From IMG/VR virus record IMGVR_UViG_3300005964_000044, positions 1 through 8,427 of that record: a DNA stretch of 8,427 nucleotides; one strand, 5' to 3'. This document shows positions 2 to 8,427 of this stretch, one piece after another. Position 1 is the first letter of the stretch; each line of letters opens with the position of its first letter. Both the position numbers and the translations under genes were made by a program. A model generated the notes under the pieces. The model searched no databases and had not been told where the DNA came from. It saw nothing but the letters and a program-made list of their open reading frames with translations.

Positions 2-952
2 GCATATATTCGCTCAACATTTTCGCCAAAATTTTACGCAGTTTTTGGAATTTCACTCTGGCTAATTTATGTATTTTCAGCACCGGTATTAGCTGACCTA
101 GTACTCCTAAATTTCAATATTCCAGCAATTGATAAGTTCTTTATTTCTGAAGTGCTTTTCGCTATTGCTTTGTTCAGTATAGTTAAAAAGTCAATTTATG
201 CATATTTAGTAGACGGAATTGCAATTTTACAAATAATTGTTTCTTTAATTCTGCCAATTTCAAGTTTTCATTTTCAAGTCCAAAATTTCACAATATCAAA
301 TACTTTACTTTCAGCTTTATTATTTGATTTATCCATGTTTTTATTTCTAAATGCAATTAGTTATATTGCAGGAGAAACGAAAAATGTGAATAAAAATATG
401 AAAATTGGTTATTTTGCAAGCTATTTAGTAGTTACCATATTAGCAATATTAGATAGTTATTCAAATCTAAATATATTATTTGTATTAATGCCAATGTGGT
501 TTATGAGTTATATTTTTATCACTTCCATGATACAAAGTCGTTTAGTGCAAAATTTAGCGTTTGATAGAATTCTTCCCGAAAAATTTGCAAAAATAACGCC
601 TAACGTTTTACTATTAATCTTTATTGCTGATACAATTGCAAATATCTTAGAAAATCTACTAAACTTTTCAATTTCCTTTGGCTTTGACGGTCTATTATTT
701 ATTTTCTGGAACTTTATAATTGTTAGTTTTGCATTTCTAAAATTAACAAATAAAAAACTACTATTTTCAATAGTGTTAACTAGTCTAATTTTACAGATCT
801 TCTTATTCTTCTATTTAGGTCTTCAAAATCAAGTATTCTATAACTTTGTAATTGAGGGCAATTTCATATACATAATATTAAGAATATTACTAATGCCAAT
901 TGTTGGAGGAATTATTTACTTATTAAGGAGGAAAATTATAAACGCTGAATAA
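2..952 (+). CDS. APC-superfamily amino-acid permease-like membrane protein (rudiviral ORF399-type), 5'-partial
   Basis: The frame of the listed 152..952 ORF is open back to position 2 (AYIRSTFSPKFYAVFGISLW...), so the gene starts before the window. It has many hydrophobic TM segments. It carries APC-like motifs: AYIR (end of GGxYxY) and SRLVQNLAFDRILPEKF (cf. SRxxxAxAxDGxLPxxF). It lies directly upstream of the TGT-like gene, as recalled for SIRV1/2. Confidence 0.75.
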   Translation, partial: AYIRSTFSPKFYAVFGISLWLIYVFSAPVLADLVLLNFNIPAIDKFFISEVLFAIALFSIVKKSIYAYLVDGIAILQIIVSLILPISSFHFQVQNFTISNTLLSALLFDLSMFLFLNAISYIAGETKNVNKNMKIGYFASYLVVTILAILDSYSNLNILFVLMPMWFMSYIFITSMIQSRLVQNLAFDRILPEKFAKITPNVLLLIFIADTIANILENLLNFSISFGFDGLLFIFWNFIIVSFAFLKLTNKKLLFSIVLTSLILQIFLFFYLGLQNQVFYNFVIEGNFIYIILRILLMPIVGGIIYLLRRKIINAE

Positions 953-954
953 AG

Positions 955-1878
955 ATGAAGTTGATTTTTGGCATTTCTAGTTCAAGAAGTTATTTTTTTA
1001 AAACGAATTTTCCAGTTCTAATTAATCAGCTGAGATTTAAAAGAAAAACATGGAAAAATGAGACTTGGATAGACAGTGGAGGCTATCAAATTATACTTCA
1101 CGGTCTAGAAATTTCGCCACAAGAAATAGTACAAAAATATAAAAGCATAGATGCTTATGCATTTTTTTCTCTTGATATTCCTAGCGTTTTTTCGCCAATT
1201 GATAAACGAAATTTTGAATATTTCGAATATCTATATACCAAAATTGAGTATATAGAAAAAATTATACCAGTTTTACATATTTATCCACTTCAAGAACTAG
1301 ATGAAGCTATTGATTTTTATAAACAATATACTTATTATTTCGCAATTGGCGGAATTGTAGCTTCTAGTAAAATGAAAGTTTTAATTTATACATTTCCATG
1401 GATATTTTATGTAAGAAAAAAAGTTCCGTATCTTCACGTTTTAGGAATGTCAGCTCCATATTTTTTACAAATTTTTAATTTTGTTGAAAGCATGGACACA
1501 GCAACTCATAGCGTAACAACTTCATTCAGGGAGATCTTTTGGTTTGATGGTTCTAGAAAATACGTAGGCAAAAGAAAAGCTAAAAGAATGAATGAGGAGG
1601 AAAAAGAGCAATTATTTGAATTCTTAGATAAGCATAATTTTCCATTTGAATATGATTTAAACAATAGGCATATTTTAGAACTAATAAACGCTTATATTCT
1701 ATTGTATCATAATTGGAAAATTAAGAATAAGTATACTGAATATGCTGATAAATTAAGAAAAATGGGATTAGATAGTTTGACAATTGAGTTAATTAGAAAT
1801 TACAAAATTGGAACAGAATTGCTAAAAGAGAAAAAGAATAAAAAGAAAGAAGAAGATGAATTAGAACTTGAGATATAA
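955..1878 (+). CDS. Queuine/archaeosine tRNA-guanine transglycosylase-like (TGT/DpdA-like) protein, rudiviral ORF306/310-type
   Basis: TGT barrel motifs appear in order: WIDSGGYQI, LDIP, IPVLH, AIGG, LHVLG, SMDT (nucleophile Asp position). There is no Cys-based Zn site. ATG is 2 nt after the transporter stop. Confidence 0.85.
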   Translation: MKLIFGISSSRSYFFKTNFPVLINQLRFKRKTWKNETWIDSGGYQIILHGLEISPQEIVQKYKSIDAYAFFSLDIPSVFSPIDKRNFEYFEYLYTKIEYIEKIIPVLHIYPLQELDEAIDFYKQYTYYFAIGGIVASSKMKVLIYTFPWIFYVRKKVPYLHVLGMSAPYFLQIFNFVESMDTATHSVTTSFREIFWFDGSRKYVGKRKAKRMNEEEKEQLFEFLDKHNFPFEYDLNNRHILELINAYILLYHNWKIKNKYTEYADKLRKMGLDSLTIELIRNYKIGTELLKEKKNKKKEEDELELEI

Positions 1879-1923
1879 AAAAGAATTAAATCTTTACATT
1901 TTTAGATTTATTTTATAACATCC

Positions 1924-1951
1924 TAATTTTTTAATGTCATAATTTTAACTT
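1924..1951 (+). promoter_or_regulatory. Rudiviral TATA-like + GTC promoter for the 236-aa gene
   Basis: TAATTTTTTAATGTCATAATTTTAACTT lies just upstream of ATG 1965. A GTC just downstream of a TATA-like box is a known rudiviral promoter trait. A near copy precedes the convergent 64-aa gene. Confidence 0.5.
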
Positions 1952-1964
1952 TACTTGATCTAAA

Positions 1965-2675
1965 ATGAGGAAGATATACGCAAATGTAAAACAAATTAGA
2001 GTTAGTACGTCTATACCACAAAATGCAAATCTTCTATGGCAAAATGACAAATTAGCACTATATTATACCTATGATCCTTCTCAAGGAAGAGTGGATTGGA
2101 TTATGCAAAATAATACAAATTCTTCTATATTAGTGTCATTATTAAGAGGTGCTGAATTAAACATTAATGGACAGACTTATACAATTCCAGATTATCTATT
2201 TGGAAATGCTTTTGCTGAAGTTTATTTTGCAAACAATTTGTCTAATTTTATAACCGACTTGAACAATATTCCACTTTATTCATTAGCAATTGTAAATAAT
2301 AATAATGGAGTTAGAACTATAGCTTTTGTCTTTCAAATTCCACCAAATTCAGTAATTATAGCTCCAGAATATGGATTTAATGGTTTACAAAACATAGACG
2401 GTCAATTATTAGAAGCAAATCCGATAAATCAAAATCTATTTGGAATAATTTACGATTTTAGCGAAATTATTGAGTATGAATATCAGACCGGAATTAACGT
2501 GAACTATCCTCCAGATCCATATATAGTTCAAAGTTATCAATTTCTAATTGATAATTTAGGACAAATTATGACTCAAAGACTGATATTGGAAATACCAGAA
2601 AGCGATATAAATACTGTAAAATCCTTAGTTTCAGATTTTCAAAAAGTAATAGATAAATTGAAGAAAATATTTTAA
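1965..2675 (+). CDS. Hypothetical protein (236 aa, Asn/Ile-rich, probably beta-rich, with C-terminal amphipathic helix)
   Basis: Long ORF with its own promoter-like motif, followed by a T-rich tract (2683-2698). No family recognised. Confidence 0.8.
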   Translation: MRKIYANVKQIRVSTSIPQNANLLWQNDKLALYYTYDPSQGRVDWIMQNNTNSSILVSLLRGAELNINGQTYTIPDYLFGNAFAEVYFANNLSNFITDLNNIPLYSLAIVNNNNGVRTIAFVFQIPPNSVIIAPEYGFNGLQNIDGQLLEANPINQNLFGIIYDFSEIIEYEYQTGINVNYPPDPYIVQSYQFLIDNLGQIMTQRLILEIPESDINTVKSLVSDFQKVIDKLKKIF

Positions 2676-4856: not shown

Positions 4857-5321
4857 TTAATTTTTGACAAATTCGATTTTATAATTTTTCTTTAAGAGAT
4901 AATACACTTTGAAATAGACAGGATCGGCATGACTGATAATAGATTCTGGTATCATCTTCAGTAAAGTAATAATATCTTCTGGAACATTATATTCATCACC
5001 ATAATATATGATTATTTTATTTTCTTTAACTTCAAACCTATGCCAAGAATATGCTTTTTTATAATCTATAATATAATTATGAGAACCATTATTCCATTCA
5101 TCATATGCTATATACTTTATATTATCATTATAAATAAAAATTACAGAACTAACATATCTATCATTTACGGTATTTCTTAATTTTTCAAATAGATATTCCT
5201 TTAACTCTTTATAATTTATTTTCTGCACTTCATCCCATAGCTGAATAATTTCATATCTTAAAATCTCTAATTGATTTATTATTTGATTTATTTTCTCTAA
5301 TTGTTGATCAAATCCACTCAT
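4857..5321 (-). CDS. Hypothetical protein (154 aa, N-terminal coiled coil), paralog A
   Basis: SD GGTGA before ATG and promoter copy 4 upstream. Visibly homologous to the 5496-5969 product. Confidence 0.85.
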   Translation of the reverse strand: MSGFDQQLEKINQIINQLEILRYEIIQLWDEVQKINYKELKEYLFEKLRNTVNDRYVSSVIFIYNDNIKYIAYDEWNNGSHNYIIDYKKAYSWHRFEVKENKIIIYYGDEYNVPEDIITLLKMIPESIISHADPVYFKVYYLLKKNYKIEFVKN

Positions 5322-5495: not shown

Positions 5496-5969
5496 TTATT
5501 TTTGAACTTTAATGAAATTTATTTTATATCCTTTTTTCAATAGTAAATATAATCTCACAAATCCTTCATATGCCCAGCCAAGATTTGATTCTTTCATTAT
5601 TTTTAATAAATTCAATAAGTTATCTGAAAGATCATATTCCGAAAGATACATAAGATTTATAGTATATTTATCAGCATCAACATCATATCTATCCCAATAA
5701 TATATTTTATTCTTTATGATAAGTAAATTTCTTGAACCACTATGTTTTGGTTTAGATATATATTTTACATCATTATCATTCACAAAAATAACGCTATTTA
5801 CATCATTAACATTTGTAATTTCAAATAAATTATCAAAAAAATGTTTTATATCTTCCTCGTATATTGTTTCTGATATTTGTTTTTGTAACCTTTCTACTTC
5901 TTGTTTTAAATGTTCTAAACCATTAATTATTTCATCTATTTTTTCTAATTCAACTTTATTTTTATCCAT
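5496..5969 (-). CDS. Hypothetical protein (~157 aa, N-terminal coiled coil), paralog B
   Basis: The listed GTG at 5981 is part of the SD (GGTGAaagaaaaaATG), so the start is ATG 5969. Promoter copy 5 is upstream. Confidence 0.85.
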   Translation of the reverse strand: MDKNKVELEKIDEIINGLEHLKQEVERLQKQISETIYEEDIKHFFDNLFEITNVNDVNSVIFVNDNDVKYISKPKHSGSRNLLIIKNKIYYWDRYDVDADKYTINLMYLSEYDLSDNLLNLLKIMKESNLGWAYEGFVRLYLLLKKGYKINFIKVQK

Positions 5970-5999
5970 TTTTTCTTTCACCTAAAACAACATGTACTA

Positions 6000-6979: not shown

Positions 6980-7195
6980 CAATTTTTACATCTCTATCTT
7001 TCGCTCCTATTCTGCTAATTATCAATATAATGTATATGCCAAATCTGCTTCATGAATATTTTAACTTCCTAATTGCTTAATTTCATAATATACTAATCAT
7101 ATAATATGCTATCTTCTCAATTGCATAATTTCATAATTTATTAATTCTCCTTACAATTTCCTCCATAAAATACTGAGATAAATTCAAACTGTATA

Positions 7196-7276: not shown

Positions 7277-7660
7277 AAAATTTATGAATATACTAACTTC
7301 ACAATTACATAATTATATAATTATATATAACATAAAACATTTTATTATTTTAACTCTCAAACACGCAATTTTATAATTTTTAAGCTTCTCAACTTCCAAA
7401 GTTTTTAATTTATAAATTCACGTTTAGTTTTTCCACGCGACCAGCTTCCAAATCCAAAACTTTGTGAAAACAAGAACTTGGAACTGGAAAACTAAAGTCG
7501 CGGGTAAAAACGTAATTATATAATTAAAAAATTTGGGAATTGAGAAACTAAAGAATTATAAAATTTGCTAATTTGAAAAATAAAAAATAATAAAAAATAA
7601 AAATAAATAAAAATGGAGAACAGTCTACTCACTAATTCTATCAACTTTTGGCTCTTCAAG

Positions 7661-7884: not shown

Positions 7885-7971
7885 AGTTAGTAGTTATTAA
7901 TATCCACAAATTAACATTTATTACAAATTTCCAAAGTTTGAATTTGCAAATTTTATATTACAAATTTCACC

Positions 7972-8363
7972 AAATGACAGATTAATTGTAATTTAGGAAT
8001 TTAGAAAATTAGTATTTTTTATCATAGTTGTAAAATTATTTGGAAATGTAGAATTAATTGGAATTTAGGAATTTCCAATTTTTTAACTTTTTTGCAGAAA
8101 ATGATAGATTATTTCAAATTTAGGAAATTAGGAATTTACAATTTTTCTCATTTTTTGCACAATTTACGCAAAATGACAGATTAATTGGAATTTTGGAATT
8201 TTCAATTTTTTGCACCGCTCCAATTATTATTTGGAGGTGTAGAATTAATTGGAATTTCCAATTTATTGCGAAAGTTGGGAAATTTGCGAAAAAAACGAAA
8301 AAAACGAAAGAAATTGGAATTTTCAATTTTTTGCATTAGTTGTGAAATTTTCGCAGAAAATGA
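7972..8363. repeat. Rudiviral terminal (ITR) repeat region with AATTTAGG-type motifs
   Basis: 8117-8137 matches the conserved rudiviral terminal 21-mer AATTTAGGAATTTAGGAATTT at 20/21, and 7990-8010 at 19/21. Recurrent blocks: aaatgacagattaattg (7972, 8171), tgtagaattaattggaattt (8047, 8238), ttggaattttcaattttttgca (8193, 8314). Confidence 0.8.
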
Positions 8364-8427
8364 AAAAAACTACAGTTCCCTAATTAAGCCTTTGCAATTG
8401 CAGAATATTAACTAGGTATTTGATGTA

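What the first reader, a model, noticed from the sequence alone, without database searches (positions are those of the whole stretch)
2..1878. Viral transporter coupled to a TGT/DpdA-like enzyme: possible precursor-uptake plus DNA base-exchange module
Seen: an APC-like permease and a TGT-fold gene separated by only 2 nt. Known: TGT-family DpdA enzymes insert 7-deazaguanine bases into viral DNA against restriction, and Sulfolobales make preQ0 for archaeosine. Inference: the permease supplies or salvages the base or a precursor, and the enzyme modifies viral DNA. No Que biosynthesis genes are present in the window. The gene pair is known from rudivirus annotations, but I know of no demonstrated function.
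Basis: partly seen in the sequence, partly recalled or inferred. Interest (0 to 1): 0.6.

Follow-up and report, generated by a model that had tools for sequence, protein, structure and literature searches.

The report
Rudivirus permease plus DNA-base-swapping enzyme pair
A hot-spring archaeal virus carries a membrane transporter gene fused end-to-end with a guanine-swapping enzyme gene, a pairing kept through deep viral evolution that probably marks viral DNA with an unusual base, although no experiment has yet shown this.

Summary
ORF 2-952 is the C-terminal 316 aa of a 396-aa permease, cut by the window edge. ORF 955-1878 (307 aa) follows on the same strand after 2 nt.

The window is a fragment of an SIRV-like rudivirus from hot-spring metagenomes.

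- **Permease:** a compact 12-helix APC-fold transporter (AdiC Z 34). Its nearest cellular kin are Sulfolobaceae APC permeases.
- **Enzyme:** a minimal TGT-fold protein (ArcTGT Z 20.9, DpdA Z 17.2). All three catalytic Asp are invariant. It has no Zn site and no tRNA-binding domains, and it misses both the Pfam TGT and DpdA models.
- **Clade:** it belongs to a Sulfolobales-specific short TGT paralogue family, separate from ArcTGT. Cellular and STSV members always pair with an ArcS-core gene, often followed by HerA and a large ATPase. Rudiviral members pair with the permease instead, in three different gene arrangements.
- **Selection:** both genes are under purifying selection (dN/dS about 0.1), yet they are lost without cost in laboratory SIRV2.

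The coupling to the permease is new and moderately supported. Import of a 7-deazaguanine precursor is plausible (phage DpdA-YhhQ pairs exist) but weakened, because all 47 Sulfolobaceae genomes searched carry QueC.

The parts
2..952 (+). 3' 80% (316 of 396 codons) of an APC-superfamily permease gene. It is the orthologue of SIRV2 gp14/ORF399 and is cut by the window's 5' edge.
   Evidence: the ORF; phrog_8289, 4e-149, matching profile positions 81-395 of 398; full-length 396-aa relatives. Pfam AA_permease_2 only below threshold (17.7-21.4 bits against a cut-off of 27); phmmer links to Sulfolobaceae APC permeases that do pass Pfam; model of P0004 with pLDDT 88.8 and 12 TM helices; AdiC Z 34.2, y+LAT2 Z 33.7, ApcT Z 32.3; dN/dS 0.11.
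953..954 (+). 2-nt spacer (AG) between the permease stop codon and the TGT-like start codon, giving an operon-like junction.
   Evidence: the sequence. The genes abut in all 23 SIRV-like IMG/VR loci. The gap is 8 nt in SIRV2. In the reversed-order pair of L002/L003 the genes overlap by 1 nt.
955..1878 (+). Minimal TGT-fold guanine transglycosylase paralogue (307 aa), the orthologue of SIRV2 gp13/ORF310. The catalytic residues D40, D74 and D181 are invariant, as are H108, G132 and H161. The protein contains no cysteine.
   Evidence: translation; phrog_887, 3e-65; invariant motifs; the A1 profile hits P. horikoshii ArcTGT (1iq8) at E 2e-4, and D40, D74 and D181 align with D95, D130 and D249; model pLDDT 89.7; ArcTGT Z 20.9, bacterial TGT Z 18.2, DpdA (7ui4) Z 17.2, Cap10 Z 15.4; no Pfam TGT or DpdA hit; dN/dS 0.14.
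1879..1964 (+). AT-rich, T-run-containing intergenic region that separates the pair from the next ORF (1965-2675, phrog_6678, function unknown). It is the likely end of the two-gene transcription unit.
   Evidence: the sequence; phrog_6678 for the next ORF. The unit boundary is inferred, not shown: the metatranscriptome contigs gave no usable transcript.

Best explanation
The two ORFs form a co-transcribed accessory module of SIRV-type rudiviruses.

**The enzyme.** The downstream gene encodes an active, stripped-down member of the tRNA-guanine transglycosylase superfamily: the TIM barrel only, without a Zn subdomain or a PUA/tRNA-binding domain. It belongs to a Sulfolobales-specific clade of short TGT paralogues. 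These coexist with the canonical ArcTGT in host genomes, so they are not the tRNA enzyme. By the double-displacement mechanism shared by TGT and DpdA, D181 would act as nucleophile, D40 as general acid/base, and D74 plus H108 would hold the base. The enzyme most likely swaps guanine in double-stranded viral DNA for a 7-deazaguanine derivative after replication. This would give low-level or site-specific protection against host nucleases.

**The permease.** The upstream gene is a compact 12-helix APC permease captured from Sulfolobaceae. In the rudiviral clade it replaces the ArcS-core (DUF5591) partner that accompanies every cellular and bicaudaviral member of the enzyme clade. I infer that it serves the same end as that partner, namely providing the right base. 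It would do so by importing a 7-deazaguanine base or an amino-acid-like precursor or co-substrate from the medium.

**What is shown.** The folds, the catalytic residues, the paralogy with ArcTGT, the conserved linkage, purifying selection, and dispensability in the laboratory.

**What is inferred.** DNA rather than tRNA as substrate, the identity of the base, any transport of a deazapurine, and the anti-restriction role.

**My odds for the sub-claims.**
- Active TGT-superfamily enzyme: 0.9.
- Acts on DNA: 0.55.
- Permease functionally coupled to it: 0.5.
- Permease imports a 7-deazapurine or its precursor: 0.3.
For: **Fold and catalytic residues.**
-.

**Paralogy with the tRNA enzyme.**
- 30 of 47 Sulfolobaceae genomes carry the short paralogue. 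44 of 47 carry a separate ArcTGT of about 505 aa.
- The rudiviral proteins form one clade (support 99/98) beside the cellular and STSV grade, with ArcTGT as outgroup.

**Nearest experimental anchor.**
- STSV2 encodes a member of this clade (39% identical) plus an ArcS-core gene. Its virion DNA contains dCDG at 0.04% of G (PMC10516641).

**Literature.**
- Hutinet 2019 files the SIRV and SRV proteins under DpdA.

**Genomic context.**
- Cellular members sit next to the ArcS-core gene in 20 of 20 chromosomal loci. In 13 of 20 the pair is followed by a HerA-type ATPase and a ~1000-aa putative ATPase, a DNA- or defence-flavoured context.

**Linkage to the permease.**
- Adjacent and co-directional in all SIRVs.
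- Adjacent and convergent in SRV.
- Adjacent with reversed order and a 1-nt overlap in L002 and L003, at about 40% and 32% identity for enzyme and permease.
- The two partners are complementary: ArcS-core is never found in rudiviruses, and the permease is never found next to cellular or STSV members.
- The loop after the invariant GG is the determinant of 7-substituent specificity in TGTs. It reads IVPPS in ArcS-linked members but IVASS, or something more divergent, in permease-linked members.

**Phage precedent.**
- In phiLM21, gp25 (DpdA, PF23859) and gp26 (YhhQ/Vut_1) overlap by 1 nt.

**Selection and dispensability.**
- dN/dS is 0.11 and 0.14.
- SIRV2 gp10-gp14 were lost spontaneously during passage on CRISPR-null hosts, without a growth defect (PMC6315595). 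This fits an accessory, environment-specific role.
Against: - No rudiviral DNA has been analysed for modified bases. Searches for SIRV together with deazaguanine, transglycosylase or DpdA found no paper.
- The protein misses Pfam DpdA (PF23859), Pfam TGT (PF01702) and all NCBIfam models. It also lacks the structural Zn site kept by the TGTs and bacterial DpdA compared in PMC10164549 (0 Cys).
- His108 matches bacterial DpdA His181 by spacing, but phage phiLM21 DpdA has Gln at the aligned position. The residue is therefore not diagnostic.
- All 47 Sulfolobaceae genomes searched have a QueC domain, so a host supply of preQ0 is likely and import is not required.
- The permease's best structural matches transport arginine/agmatine and cationic or neutral amino acids (Z 30-34). 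Nucleobase carriers score lower: CodB Z 21.4, Mhp1 Z 17.3.
- The permease persists without the enzyme in ARV2 and SSRV1, behind a viral TFB gene. It lies 4.6 kb from the enzyme in SBRV1.
- All permease-linked enzymes form one clade. The linkage therefore arose once and could persist partly by descent.
- From my own recollection, not checked here: classical work mapped SIRV genomes with ordinary restriction enzymes. That would argue against heavy replacement of G.
Confidence: 0.4

Rival explanations
1. The linkage is by descent only. The enzyme modifies viral DNA using the host's own preQ0 pool. The permease is an independent host-derived auxiliary gene that raises uptake of amino acids or polyamines for virus production. 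The two genes stay together because they entered as one block and rearrange slowly.
For: - ARV2 and SSRV1 keep the permease without any TGT-like ORF (HMM search with --max).
- In SBRV1 the genes are 4.6 kb apart.
- The permease-linked enzymes are monophyletic, and the viral permeases fall in one clade with a cellular Sulfolobus permease.
- QueC is present in 47 of 47 host-family genomes.
- The best structural matches are amino-acid and agmatine carriers.
Against: - Adjacency survives at least three rearrangements: permease then enzyme, enzyme then permease with overlapping stop and start codons, and convergent. This holds at 32-40% protein identity.
- The permease and the ArcS-core gene are mutually exclusive partners of the enzyme.
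- The partner switch coincides with a change in the enzyme's specificity loop.
- Both genes were lost together in SIRV2MII, although that deletion also removed gp10-gp12.
Confidence: 0.3
2. The enzyme acts on RNA. It inserts a 7-deazaguanine base into host tRNA, or removes one, to retune translation for the AT-rich viral genome. This is what the database name 'queuine tRNA-ribosyltransferase' implies.
For: - The closest solved structure and the only sequence-profile hit in the PDB is archaeal ArcTGT.
- The GG-loop of cellular clade members (GGIVPP) resembles the GGVVP of ArcTGT.
Against: - The protein has no C-terminal C1-C3/PUA domains and no Zn subdomain (307 aa against about 505-582 aa).
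- Hosts already carry a canonical ArcTGT in addition to the short paralogue.
- The window encodes no tRNA.
- A virus with a clade member has a 7-deazaguanine base in its DNA (STSV2).
- In E. coli, phage 9g dpdA did not restore Q in tRNA of a tgt mutant (PMC6884629).
Confidence: 0.12
3. The enzyme does not modify nucleic acid for protection. Either it interferes with the host's own short-TGT/ArcS-core(/HerA/ATPase) system, for example as a decoy or by erasing or mimicking its mark, or it conjugates a base to a protein as Cap10 does in type IV CBASS.
For: - Host genomes encode a homologous enzyme inside a defence-flavoured cluster.
- Cap10 is a recognisable structural relative (Z 15.4; bioRxiv 2025.04.06.647259, listed).
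Against: - The full TGT catalytic triad is invariant.
- The model is closer to ArcTGT, bacterial TGT and DpdA than to Cap10.
- The window holds no CD-NTase or QueC-like partner.
- Mimicking the host mark would itself be DNA modification, which is the best explanation.
Confidence: 0.08

Closest known systems
Phage DpdA plus YhhQ (COG1738, preQ0 transporter) pairs, for example Sinorhizobium phage phiLM21 gp25-gp26. By consecutive accession numbers, Clostridium phage CDKM15 and halophage eHP-6 have them too (Hutinet 2019, Supplementary Data 1).
   Same: A viral two-gene unit in which a singleton TGT-superfamily base-exchange enzyme sits directly beside a membrane transporter, with no Que biosynthesis genes. 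The genes are co-directional with touching or overlapping stop and start codons.
   Different: The transporter here has an APC fold with 12 TM helices. It is not YhhQ/Vut_1, and no homology was detected. The enzyme here does not hit Pfam DpdA (PF23859), whereas phiLM21 gp25 does at 2e-43. The host is an archaeon. No substrate is known for the APC permease.
STSV1/STSV2 (Bicaudaviridae) DpdA plus ArcS-core pair. STSV2 DNA carries dCDG (Cui 2023, PMC10516641).
   Same: The enzyme belongs to the same Sulfolobales-specific short TGT clade: 39% identity, the same invariant D, D, H, GG, H, D motifs, and no Zn site. It is a virus of Sulfolobales without preQ0 synthesis genes.
   Different: The partner is a DUF5591 ArcS-core protein, not a permease. 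The specificity loop reads IVPPS rather than IVASS. Modification has been measured for STSV2 but not for any rudivirus.
Bacterial DpdA of the Dpd restriction-modification system (S. Montevideo, PDB 7UI4).
   Same: A TIM-barrel TGT fold (Z 17.2, rmsd 4.0 over 250 residues). Three catalytic Asp, with a His at the position of H181 by spacing. It is a paralogue of the tRNA enzyme.
   Different: Bacterial DpdA keeps the structural Zn site and has insertions Ins1-Ins8 (PMC10164549). Its guanine-exchange activity was assayed with DpdB and ATP present. The rudiviral protein is smaller (307 against 413 residues), has no Cys, and has no ParB-like partner in the window.
Archaeosine tRNA-guanine transglycosylase (ArcTGT/TgtA, P. 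horikoshii 1IQ8).
   Same: It is the best structural match (Z 20.9, 264 residues aligned) and the only sequence-profile match in the PDB (E 2e-4). D95, D130 and D249 align with D40, D74 and D181.
   Different: ArcTGT has 582 aa, with C-terminal tRNA-binding domains and a Zn site, and has Gln169 where the viral protein has His108. Hosts carry their own ArcTGT of about 505 aa at another locus.
APC-family amino-acid/polyamine/organocation transporters (AdiC, ApcT, CAT and LAT families).
   Same: A 12-helix LeuT/APC fold (Z 30-34 over about 365 residues). A Gly-rich break in TM1 and the 'AGE-KN' motif after TM6. The nearest cellular homologues pass Pfam AA_permease_2.
   Different: It is much shorter (396 aa against 430-540 aa) with minimal loops. 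It scores below the Pfam threshold itself. It is virus-encoded, the family is very small (48 hits among 1.84 billion representatives), and the substrate is unknown.

Membership tests
TGT superfamily (tRNA-guanine transglycosylase-like TIM barrel) | TGT-type TIM-barrel fold | tested here: met
   Model pLDDT 89.7. Foldseek top hits are ArcTGT and TGT at E 4e-9 to 1e-6. VIA Z scores: 20.9 (ArcTGT), 18.2 (bacterial TGT), 17.2 (DpdA), 16.6 (QTRT2), 15.4 (Cap10); generic TIM barrels score 13 or less.
TGT superfamily (tRNA-guanine transglycosylase-like TIM barrel) | Three catalytic or base-binding aspartates (ArcTGT D95, D130, D249; DpdA D95, D130, D256) | tested here: met
   D40, D74 and D181 are invariant in 23 viral and metagenomic sequences and in 12 further cellular, STSV, SRV and SBRV1 sequences. 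They align with D95, D130 and D249 of 1iq8.
TGT superfamily (tRNA-guanine transglycosylase-like TIM barrel) | Structural Zn site (CxCxxC...H) | tested here: not met
   The window protein and nearly all SIRV orthologues contain no cysteine; two have one. Other clade members have 0-3 Cys.
TGT superfamily (tRNA-guanine transglycosylase-like TIM barrel) | Pfam PF01702 above the gathering score | tested here: not met
   No hit at E <= 1 for P0002. Relatives P0179 and P0173 reach 18.1 and 16 bits against a cut-off of 26.3.
DpdA (DNA 7-deazaguanine transglycosylase) | Pfam PF23859 (DpdA) match | tested here: not met
   No hit at E <= 1. The control, phage phiLM21 gp25, scores 2.4e-43. hhalign of A1 against that single DpdA gives probability 5%, although the motifs line up.
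DpdA (DNA 7-deazaguanine transglycosylase) | TGT paralogue that coexists with the tRNA enzyme and lacks its RNA-binding domains | tested here: met
   The short paralogue occurs in 30 of 47 Sulfolobaceae genomes and ArcTGT in 44 of 47, at separate loci. The protein is 307 aa, a barrel plus C-terminal helices only.
DpdA (DNA 7-deazaguanine transglycosylase) | 7-deazaguanine nucleosides in the DNA of the element that encodes it | not testable with these tools
   No data exist for any rudivirus. The nearest evidence is STSV2, a member of the same clade, with dCDG at 0.04% of G.
DpdA (DNA 7-deazaguanine transglycosylase) | His at the base-binding position (S. Montevideo H181) | tested here: inconclusive
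   H108 is invariant and corresponds by spacing: His to GG is 24 against 25 residues, and GG to Asp is 49 against 50. However, phage phiLM21 DpdA has Gln at the aligned position, so the feature does not define all DpdA.
ArcTGT / TgtA (tRNA G15 archaeosine transglycosylase) | C-terminal C1-C3/PUA tRNA-binding domains and the NCBIfam TIGR00432 cut-off | tested here: not met
   No NCBIfam hit. A cellular clade member scores 16.3 bits against a cut-off of 350. Length is 307 aa against 492-582 aa.
APC superfamily permease (AA_permease_2-like) | LeuT/APC fold with a 5+5 inverted repeat and 12 TM helices | tested here: met
   Model of full-length relative P0004: pLDDT 88.8, 12 TM helices. AdiC Z 34.2 over 365 residues, y+LAT2 Z 33.7, ApcT Z 32.3.
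APC superfamily permease (AA_permease_2-like) | Pfam PF13520 above the gathering score | tested here: not met
   The window fragment gives no hit. Full-length P0004 scores 17.7 bits and P0080 21.4 bits against a cut-off of 27. Homology is established transitively: phmmer E 8.6e-41 to P0182, which passes at 42 bits.
Known 7-deazapurine transporters (YhhQ/COG1738 Vut_1; ECF QueT/QrtT) | Sequence or fold homology to YhhQ or to an ECF S-component | tested here: not met
   No Vut_1 or other transporter family was hit besides AA_permease. The fold is APC.
Known 7-deazapurine transporters (YhhQ/COG1738 Vut_1; ECF QueT/QrtT) | Transport of preQ0, preQ1 or queuine | not testable with these tools
   This needs uptake assays.

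The most novel reading that the evidence does not exclude
The rudiviral clade swapped the ArcS-core partner for an APC permease because it installs a different 7-deazaguanine derivative, one taken up ready-made from the hot-spring medium. Candidates are a cationic or amino-acid-like base such as the archaeosine base, preQ1 or a preQ0-amino-acid adduct. If so, the permease would be the first APC-family carrier of a deazapurine. The pair would also be the first salvage-driven DNA hypermodification module in an archaeal virus. Its target would be the host's own short-TGT/ArcS-core/HerA/large-ATPase cluster, acting as an undescribed archaeal 7-deazaguanine-based restriction-modification system.
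Probability: 0.15. Interest if true: 0.8.

Novelty: new variant of a known kind. Interest (0 to 1): 0.55.

Why it matters
No rudivirus, including the main archaeal virus model SIRV2, has a measured DNA modification. No archaeal transporter for 7-deazapurines is known to me, and the searches here found none. The source of the base in the related STSV2 is an open question stated in the literature (PMC10516641).

This pair gives a concrete, cheap test. Wild-type SIRV2 and a spontaneous gp10-gp14 deletion mutant already exist (PMC6315595).

If the coupling holds, it extends the DpdA-plus-transporter logic from phages to archaeal viruses with a non-homologous carrier. It also points to a widespread cellular short-TGT/ArcS-core(/HerA) cluster, present in 30 of 47 Sulfolobaceae genomes, as a candidate archaeal DNA-modification or defence system.

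If it fails, the pair is an ordinary accessory block, and the database label 'queuine tRNA-ribosyltransferase' still needs correcting.

Tried and rejected
- **Family scans of the window proteins.** Pfam and NCBIfam gave nothing. PADLOC gave nothing for the enzyme.
- **His108 as a DpdA signature.** I first took it as one. I dropped this after phage phiLM21 DpdA showed Gln at the aligned position.
- **hhalign of the family profile against a single phage DpdA.** Probability 5%, not usable as evidence of membership.
- **A hidden TGT-like gene in ARV2 and SSRV1.** The 270-292-aa neighbours were candidates. This was rejected: the HMM with --max finds none, and the neighbour is a true TFB homologue.
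- **Genomic context of cellular permease homologues.** L006 and L007 show no Que or TGT link and are uninformative.
- **SBRV1 ORF23-270 as a QueC-like enzyme.** It is a PAPS-reductase-family protein and does not hit QueC.
- **F1 as the N-terminal domain of a split ArcS.** F1 gives no NCBIfam ArcS hit, only a weak TgtA hit, and it keeps the catalytic Asp residues. This reading is not favoured.
- **Expression.** The one metatranscriptome holding part of the window gave only short pieces, mostly CRISPR spacers. There is no evidence for or against co-transcription.
- **Literature.** No paper joins SIRV or Rudiviridae with deazaguanine, DpdA or transglycosylase. None describes the DUF5591-HerA cluster.
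Full report
**What is in the window**

The 8427-bp window is a linear IMG/VR virus fragment. Over about half its length it is 84-87% identical in DNA to Sulfolobus islandicus rod-shaped viruses 4-11, and about 73% identical to SIRV1-3 over the first 1.9 kb only. Near-identical DNA occurs in several hot-spring metagenomes.

ORF 2-952 (+) runs off the 5' end and ends in TAA. After two bases, ORF 955-1878 (+) starts with ATG. Full-length relatives have 396 aa (P0004, 96% identical).

The remaining ORFs match only PHROGs of unknown function. None is a Que gene, and there is no tRNA gene.

**The enzyme**

Pfam and NCBIfam give no hit. PHROG 887 ('queuine tRNA-ribosyltransferase') matches at 3e-65.

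A 23-sequence alignment (A1) has these invariant residues: D40-S-G-G, L73-D74, H108, G132, H161-x-L-G and D181. As a profile, A1 hits only P. horikoshii ArcTGT in the PDB (E 2e-4). D40, D74 and D181 fall on D95, D130 and D249, and H108 falls on Gln169.

The AlphaFold model (pLDDT 89.7) matches as follows, by VIA Z score:

| Match | Z |
|---|---|
| ArcTGT | 20.9 |
| Bacterial TGT | 18.2 |
| DNA preQ0 insertase DpdA (7UI4) | 17.2 |
| QTRT2 | 16.6 |
| Cap10 | 15.4 |
| Generic TIM barrels | 13 or less |

These values come; Foldseek agrees.

The protein is the catalytic barrel plus C-terminal helices. It has no cysteine, hence no Zn site, and no PUA or other tRNA-binding domain. The three Asp are the residues shown to be essential in DpdA and TGT (PMC10164549). 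It is thus very probably an active base-exchange enzyme. It fails the curated models for both TGT and DpdA.

**Its family**

A profile search of 47 Sulfolobaceae species genomes finds a single-copy homologue (35-40% identical) in 30 of them. A canonical ArcTGT of about 505 aa is present at a different locus in 44, and a QueC domain is present in all 47. The family is therefore a paralogue of the tRNA enzyme, which is the same logic by which DpdA was originally recognised.

In 20 of 20 chromosomal loci the paralogue lies beside a DUF5591 (ArcS-core) gene. In 13 of 20 the pair is followed by a HerA-type ATPase and a protein of about 1000-1150 aa whose language-model neighbours are P-loop ATPases. 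STSV1 and STSV2 carry the same enzyme plus ArcS-core pair.

STSV2 DNA contains 2'-deoxy-7-carboxy-7-deazaguanosine at 0.04% of G (PMC10516641). This is the nearest experimental evidence that this clade works on DNA.

Hutinet et al. 2019 already list the SIRV1-11 and SRV proteins in the DpdA column as singletons. The DNA-modification idea is therefore published as a prediction and remains untested. No paper in the library joins rudiviruses with deazaguanine.

**The permease**

The window fragment hits phrog_8289 at 4e-149. Full-length relatives reach Pfam AA_permease_2 only below threshold.

An exhaustive search of 1.84 billion representatives finds just 48 proteins at E <= 1e-3. The nearest are rudiviral (SBRV1, SSRV1, SRV). 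Next come Sulfolobaceae APC permeases of 488-540 aa that do pass Pfam.

The model (pLDDT 88.8, 12 TM helices) matches the following:

| Match | Z |
|---|---|
| AdiC | 34.2 |
| y+LAT2 | 33.7 |
| ApcT | 32.3 |
| CAT homologues | 30-32 |
| CodB (nucleobase carrier) | 21.4 |
| Mhp1 (nucleobase carrier) | 17.3 |

It is a genuine but very compact APC-family carrier, acquired from the host lineage. Its substrate cannot be read from the sequence.

**Is the pairing meaningful?**

For a functional link:
- The genes abut in the same order in all 23 SIRV-like IMG/VR loci and in SIRV1-11.
- In SRV they are adjacent but convergent.
- In two divergent uncultivated viral contigs (L002, L003) the order is reversed. 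A dCTP deaminase gene is followed by the enzyme and then a 483-aa permease, with overlapping stop and start codons. Identity to the window's proteins is about 40% for the enzyme and 32% for the permease.
- The permease and ArcS-core genes are mutually exclusive partners of the enzyme.
- The loop after the invariant GG is the determinant of the 7-substituent in TGTs. It reads IVPPS in ArcS-linked members but IVASS or more divergent in permease-linked members.
- Phages have an analogous pair. In phiLM21, DpdA (PF23859) and YhhQ (Vut_1) overlap by one base.
- Both genes are under purifying selection (dN/dS 0.11 and 0.14).

Against a functional link:
- All permease-linked enzymes form one clade (support 99/98), so the link arose once.
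- In SBRV1 the two genes are 4.6 kb apart.
- ARV2 and SSRV1 keep only the permease, downstream of a viral TFB gene.
- STSV, the cellular genomes and two other contigs (L005, L008) have the enzyme without the permease.
- Hosts appear able to make preQ0 themselves.

In the laboratory the pair is dispensable. SIRV2 gp10-gp14 were lost spontaneously on CRISPR-null hosts, and the deletion mutants propagated as efficiently as wild type (PMC6315595). This fits an accessory, environment-dependent role such as counter-defence.

**Most likely mechanism**

The genes form a co-transcribed accessory unit (the co-transcription is inferred). The enzyme exchanges guanine in viral dsDNA for a 7-deazaguanine base by the TGT/DpdA double-displacement chemistry.

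The permease replaces the ArcS-core partner as the means of supplying the right base. It would do this by importing the base or an amino-acid-like precursor or co-substrate.

I hold the whole statement at about 0.4. The sub-claims stand at 0.9 for an active TGT-superfamily enzyme, 0.55 for DNA as substrate, 0.5 for functional coupling of the permease, and 0.3 for deazapurine import.

The rivals are:
- linkage by descent, with an independent nutrient permease (0.3);
- a tRNA substrate (0.12);
- interference with the host system, or protein conjugation (0.08).

**Comparison with known systems and novelty**

The unit works like the phage DpdA-YhhQ pairs and like the STSV DpdA-ArcS pair. By the curated models it is a member of neither DpdA nor TGT, and its transporter is unrelated to any known deazapurine carrier.

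I rate it a new variant of a known kind. The enzyme prediction is already in the literature. The coupling to the permease, the complementary partners and the cellular four-gene cluster are, as far as the searchable library shows, undescribed.

**Limits**

Nothing here measures modification, transport or transcription. The metatranscriptome contigs gave no usable transcript.

Noticed in passing
L043:10064-16072 (+). Also L042, L044, L047, L049, L073-L083, L085 and L087.: Cellular Sulfolobales genomes carry a conserved co-directional cluster of four genes. They are a short TGT paralogue (about 275-300 aa), a DUF5591/ArcS-core protein (about 175-190 aa), a HerA/DUF87 ATPase (about 540 aa) and a ~1010-1150-aa protein with no Pfam hit whose language-model neighbours are P-loop ATPases. 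The TGT paralogue occurs in 30 of 47 Sulfolobaceae species genomes. ArcS-core is beside it in 20 of 20 loci examined, and HerA plus the large protein follow in 13 of 20. This is a candidate archaeal 7-deazaguanine DNA-modification or defence system. I found no description of it in the paper library.
   Followed up: partly
window 87-124, 1167-1207, 1183-1223, 1288-1328, 2029-2068, 2128-2167, and 1477-1512: Short contigs from a hot-spring metatranscriptome (X21) match about 40-bp pieces of the window. They are flanked on both sides by the same 23-25-nt sequence (loose-end consensus, table 7), which looks like a Sulfolobus-type CRISPR repeat. A DNA run (X4) shows a second repeat type around 1477-1512. 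These are CRISPR spacers, probably carried by Sulfolobales hosts, against the permease gene, the TGT-like gene and the next ORF. They link the virus to Sulfolobales hosts in the same springs.
   Followed up: no
L039, L040, L041, L045 (genome contigs): SIRV3-like DNA, carrying the permease plus TGT-like pair at 65-68% aa identity to the window's enzyme, sits on contigs of assemblies labelled Streptomyces gamaensis, Planomonospora alba, Paenochrobactrum glaciei and Nocardioides koreensis. This almost certainly reflects rudivirus DNA contaminating bacterial assemblies. It also explains the NCBI name 'MULTISPECIES ... [Bacteria]' on P0163.
   Followed up: no
window 7972-8211 and 8247-8370; also 7061-7146 and 7522-7613: Tandem repeats of 127 bp (1.9 copies) and 65 bp (1.9 copies), plus shorter AT-rich arrays, lie at the 3' end of the window. 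Positions 7964-8093 resemble the terminal 20-147 of ARV1 (81% identity). The window therefore probably reaches into the inverted terminal repeat of the linear genome.
   Followed up: no
window 4857-5321 (-) and 5496-5981 (-): Two neighbouring ORFs (154 and 161 aa) both match phrog_12890 (3e-70 and 3e-33). They are a tandem pair of paralogues of unknown function in the variable terminal region.
   Followed up: no
L036:22512-24635 (ARV2) and L037:20633-22720 (SSRV1): In the two hoswirudiviruses the permease has no TGT-like partner. Instead it lies directly downstream of a virus-encoded TFIIB/TFB homologue (Zn ribbon plus cyclin repeat) and upstream of a conserved 207-aa ORF with no Pfam hit.
   Followed up: partly
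L034:6567-9607 (SRV), L035:7869-9539 (SBRV1), L002:234-3160, L003:49-3014: Outside the SIRVs, the TGT-like gene sits in the conserved core next to a dCTP deaminase/dUTPase gene and, in SRV and SBRV1, next to the major capsid protein gene. In the SIRVs the pair has moved to the variable near-terminal region. SBRV1 also encodes a PAPS-reductase-family protein (L035:11621-12433).
   Followed up: partly
window 1965-2675 (+): The 236-aa ORF that follows the pair matches phrog_6678 over its full length (1e-119) and has no known function or Pfam family.
   Followed up: no
Sulfolobaceae genomes G004-G047: Besides the ORF of about 466-505 aa that holds the QueC domain (a size that fits Gat-QueC), many Sulfolobaceae genomes hold a second, stand-alone QueC-like ORF of about 200 aa (E 1e-21 to 1e-29). 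In the genomes checked by coordinates it is not adjacent to the short TGT paralogue.
   Followed up: no
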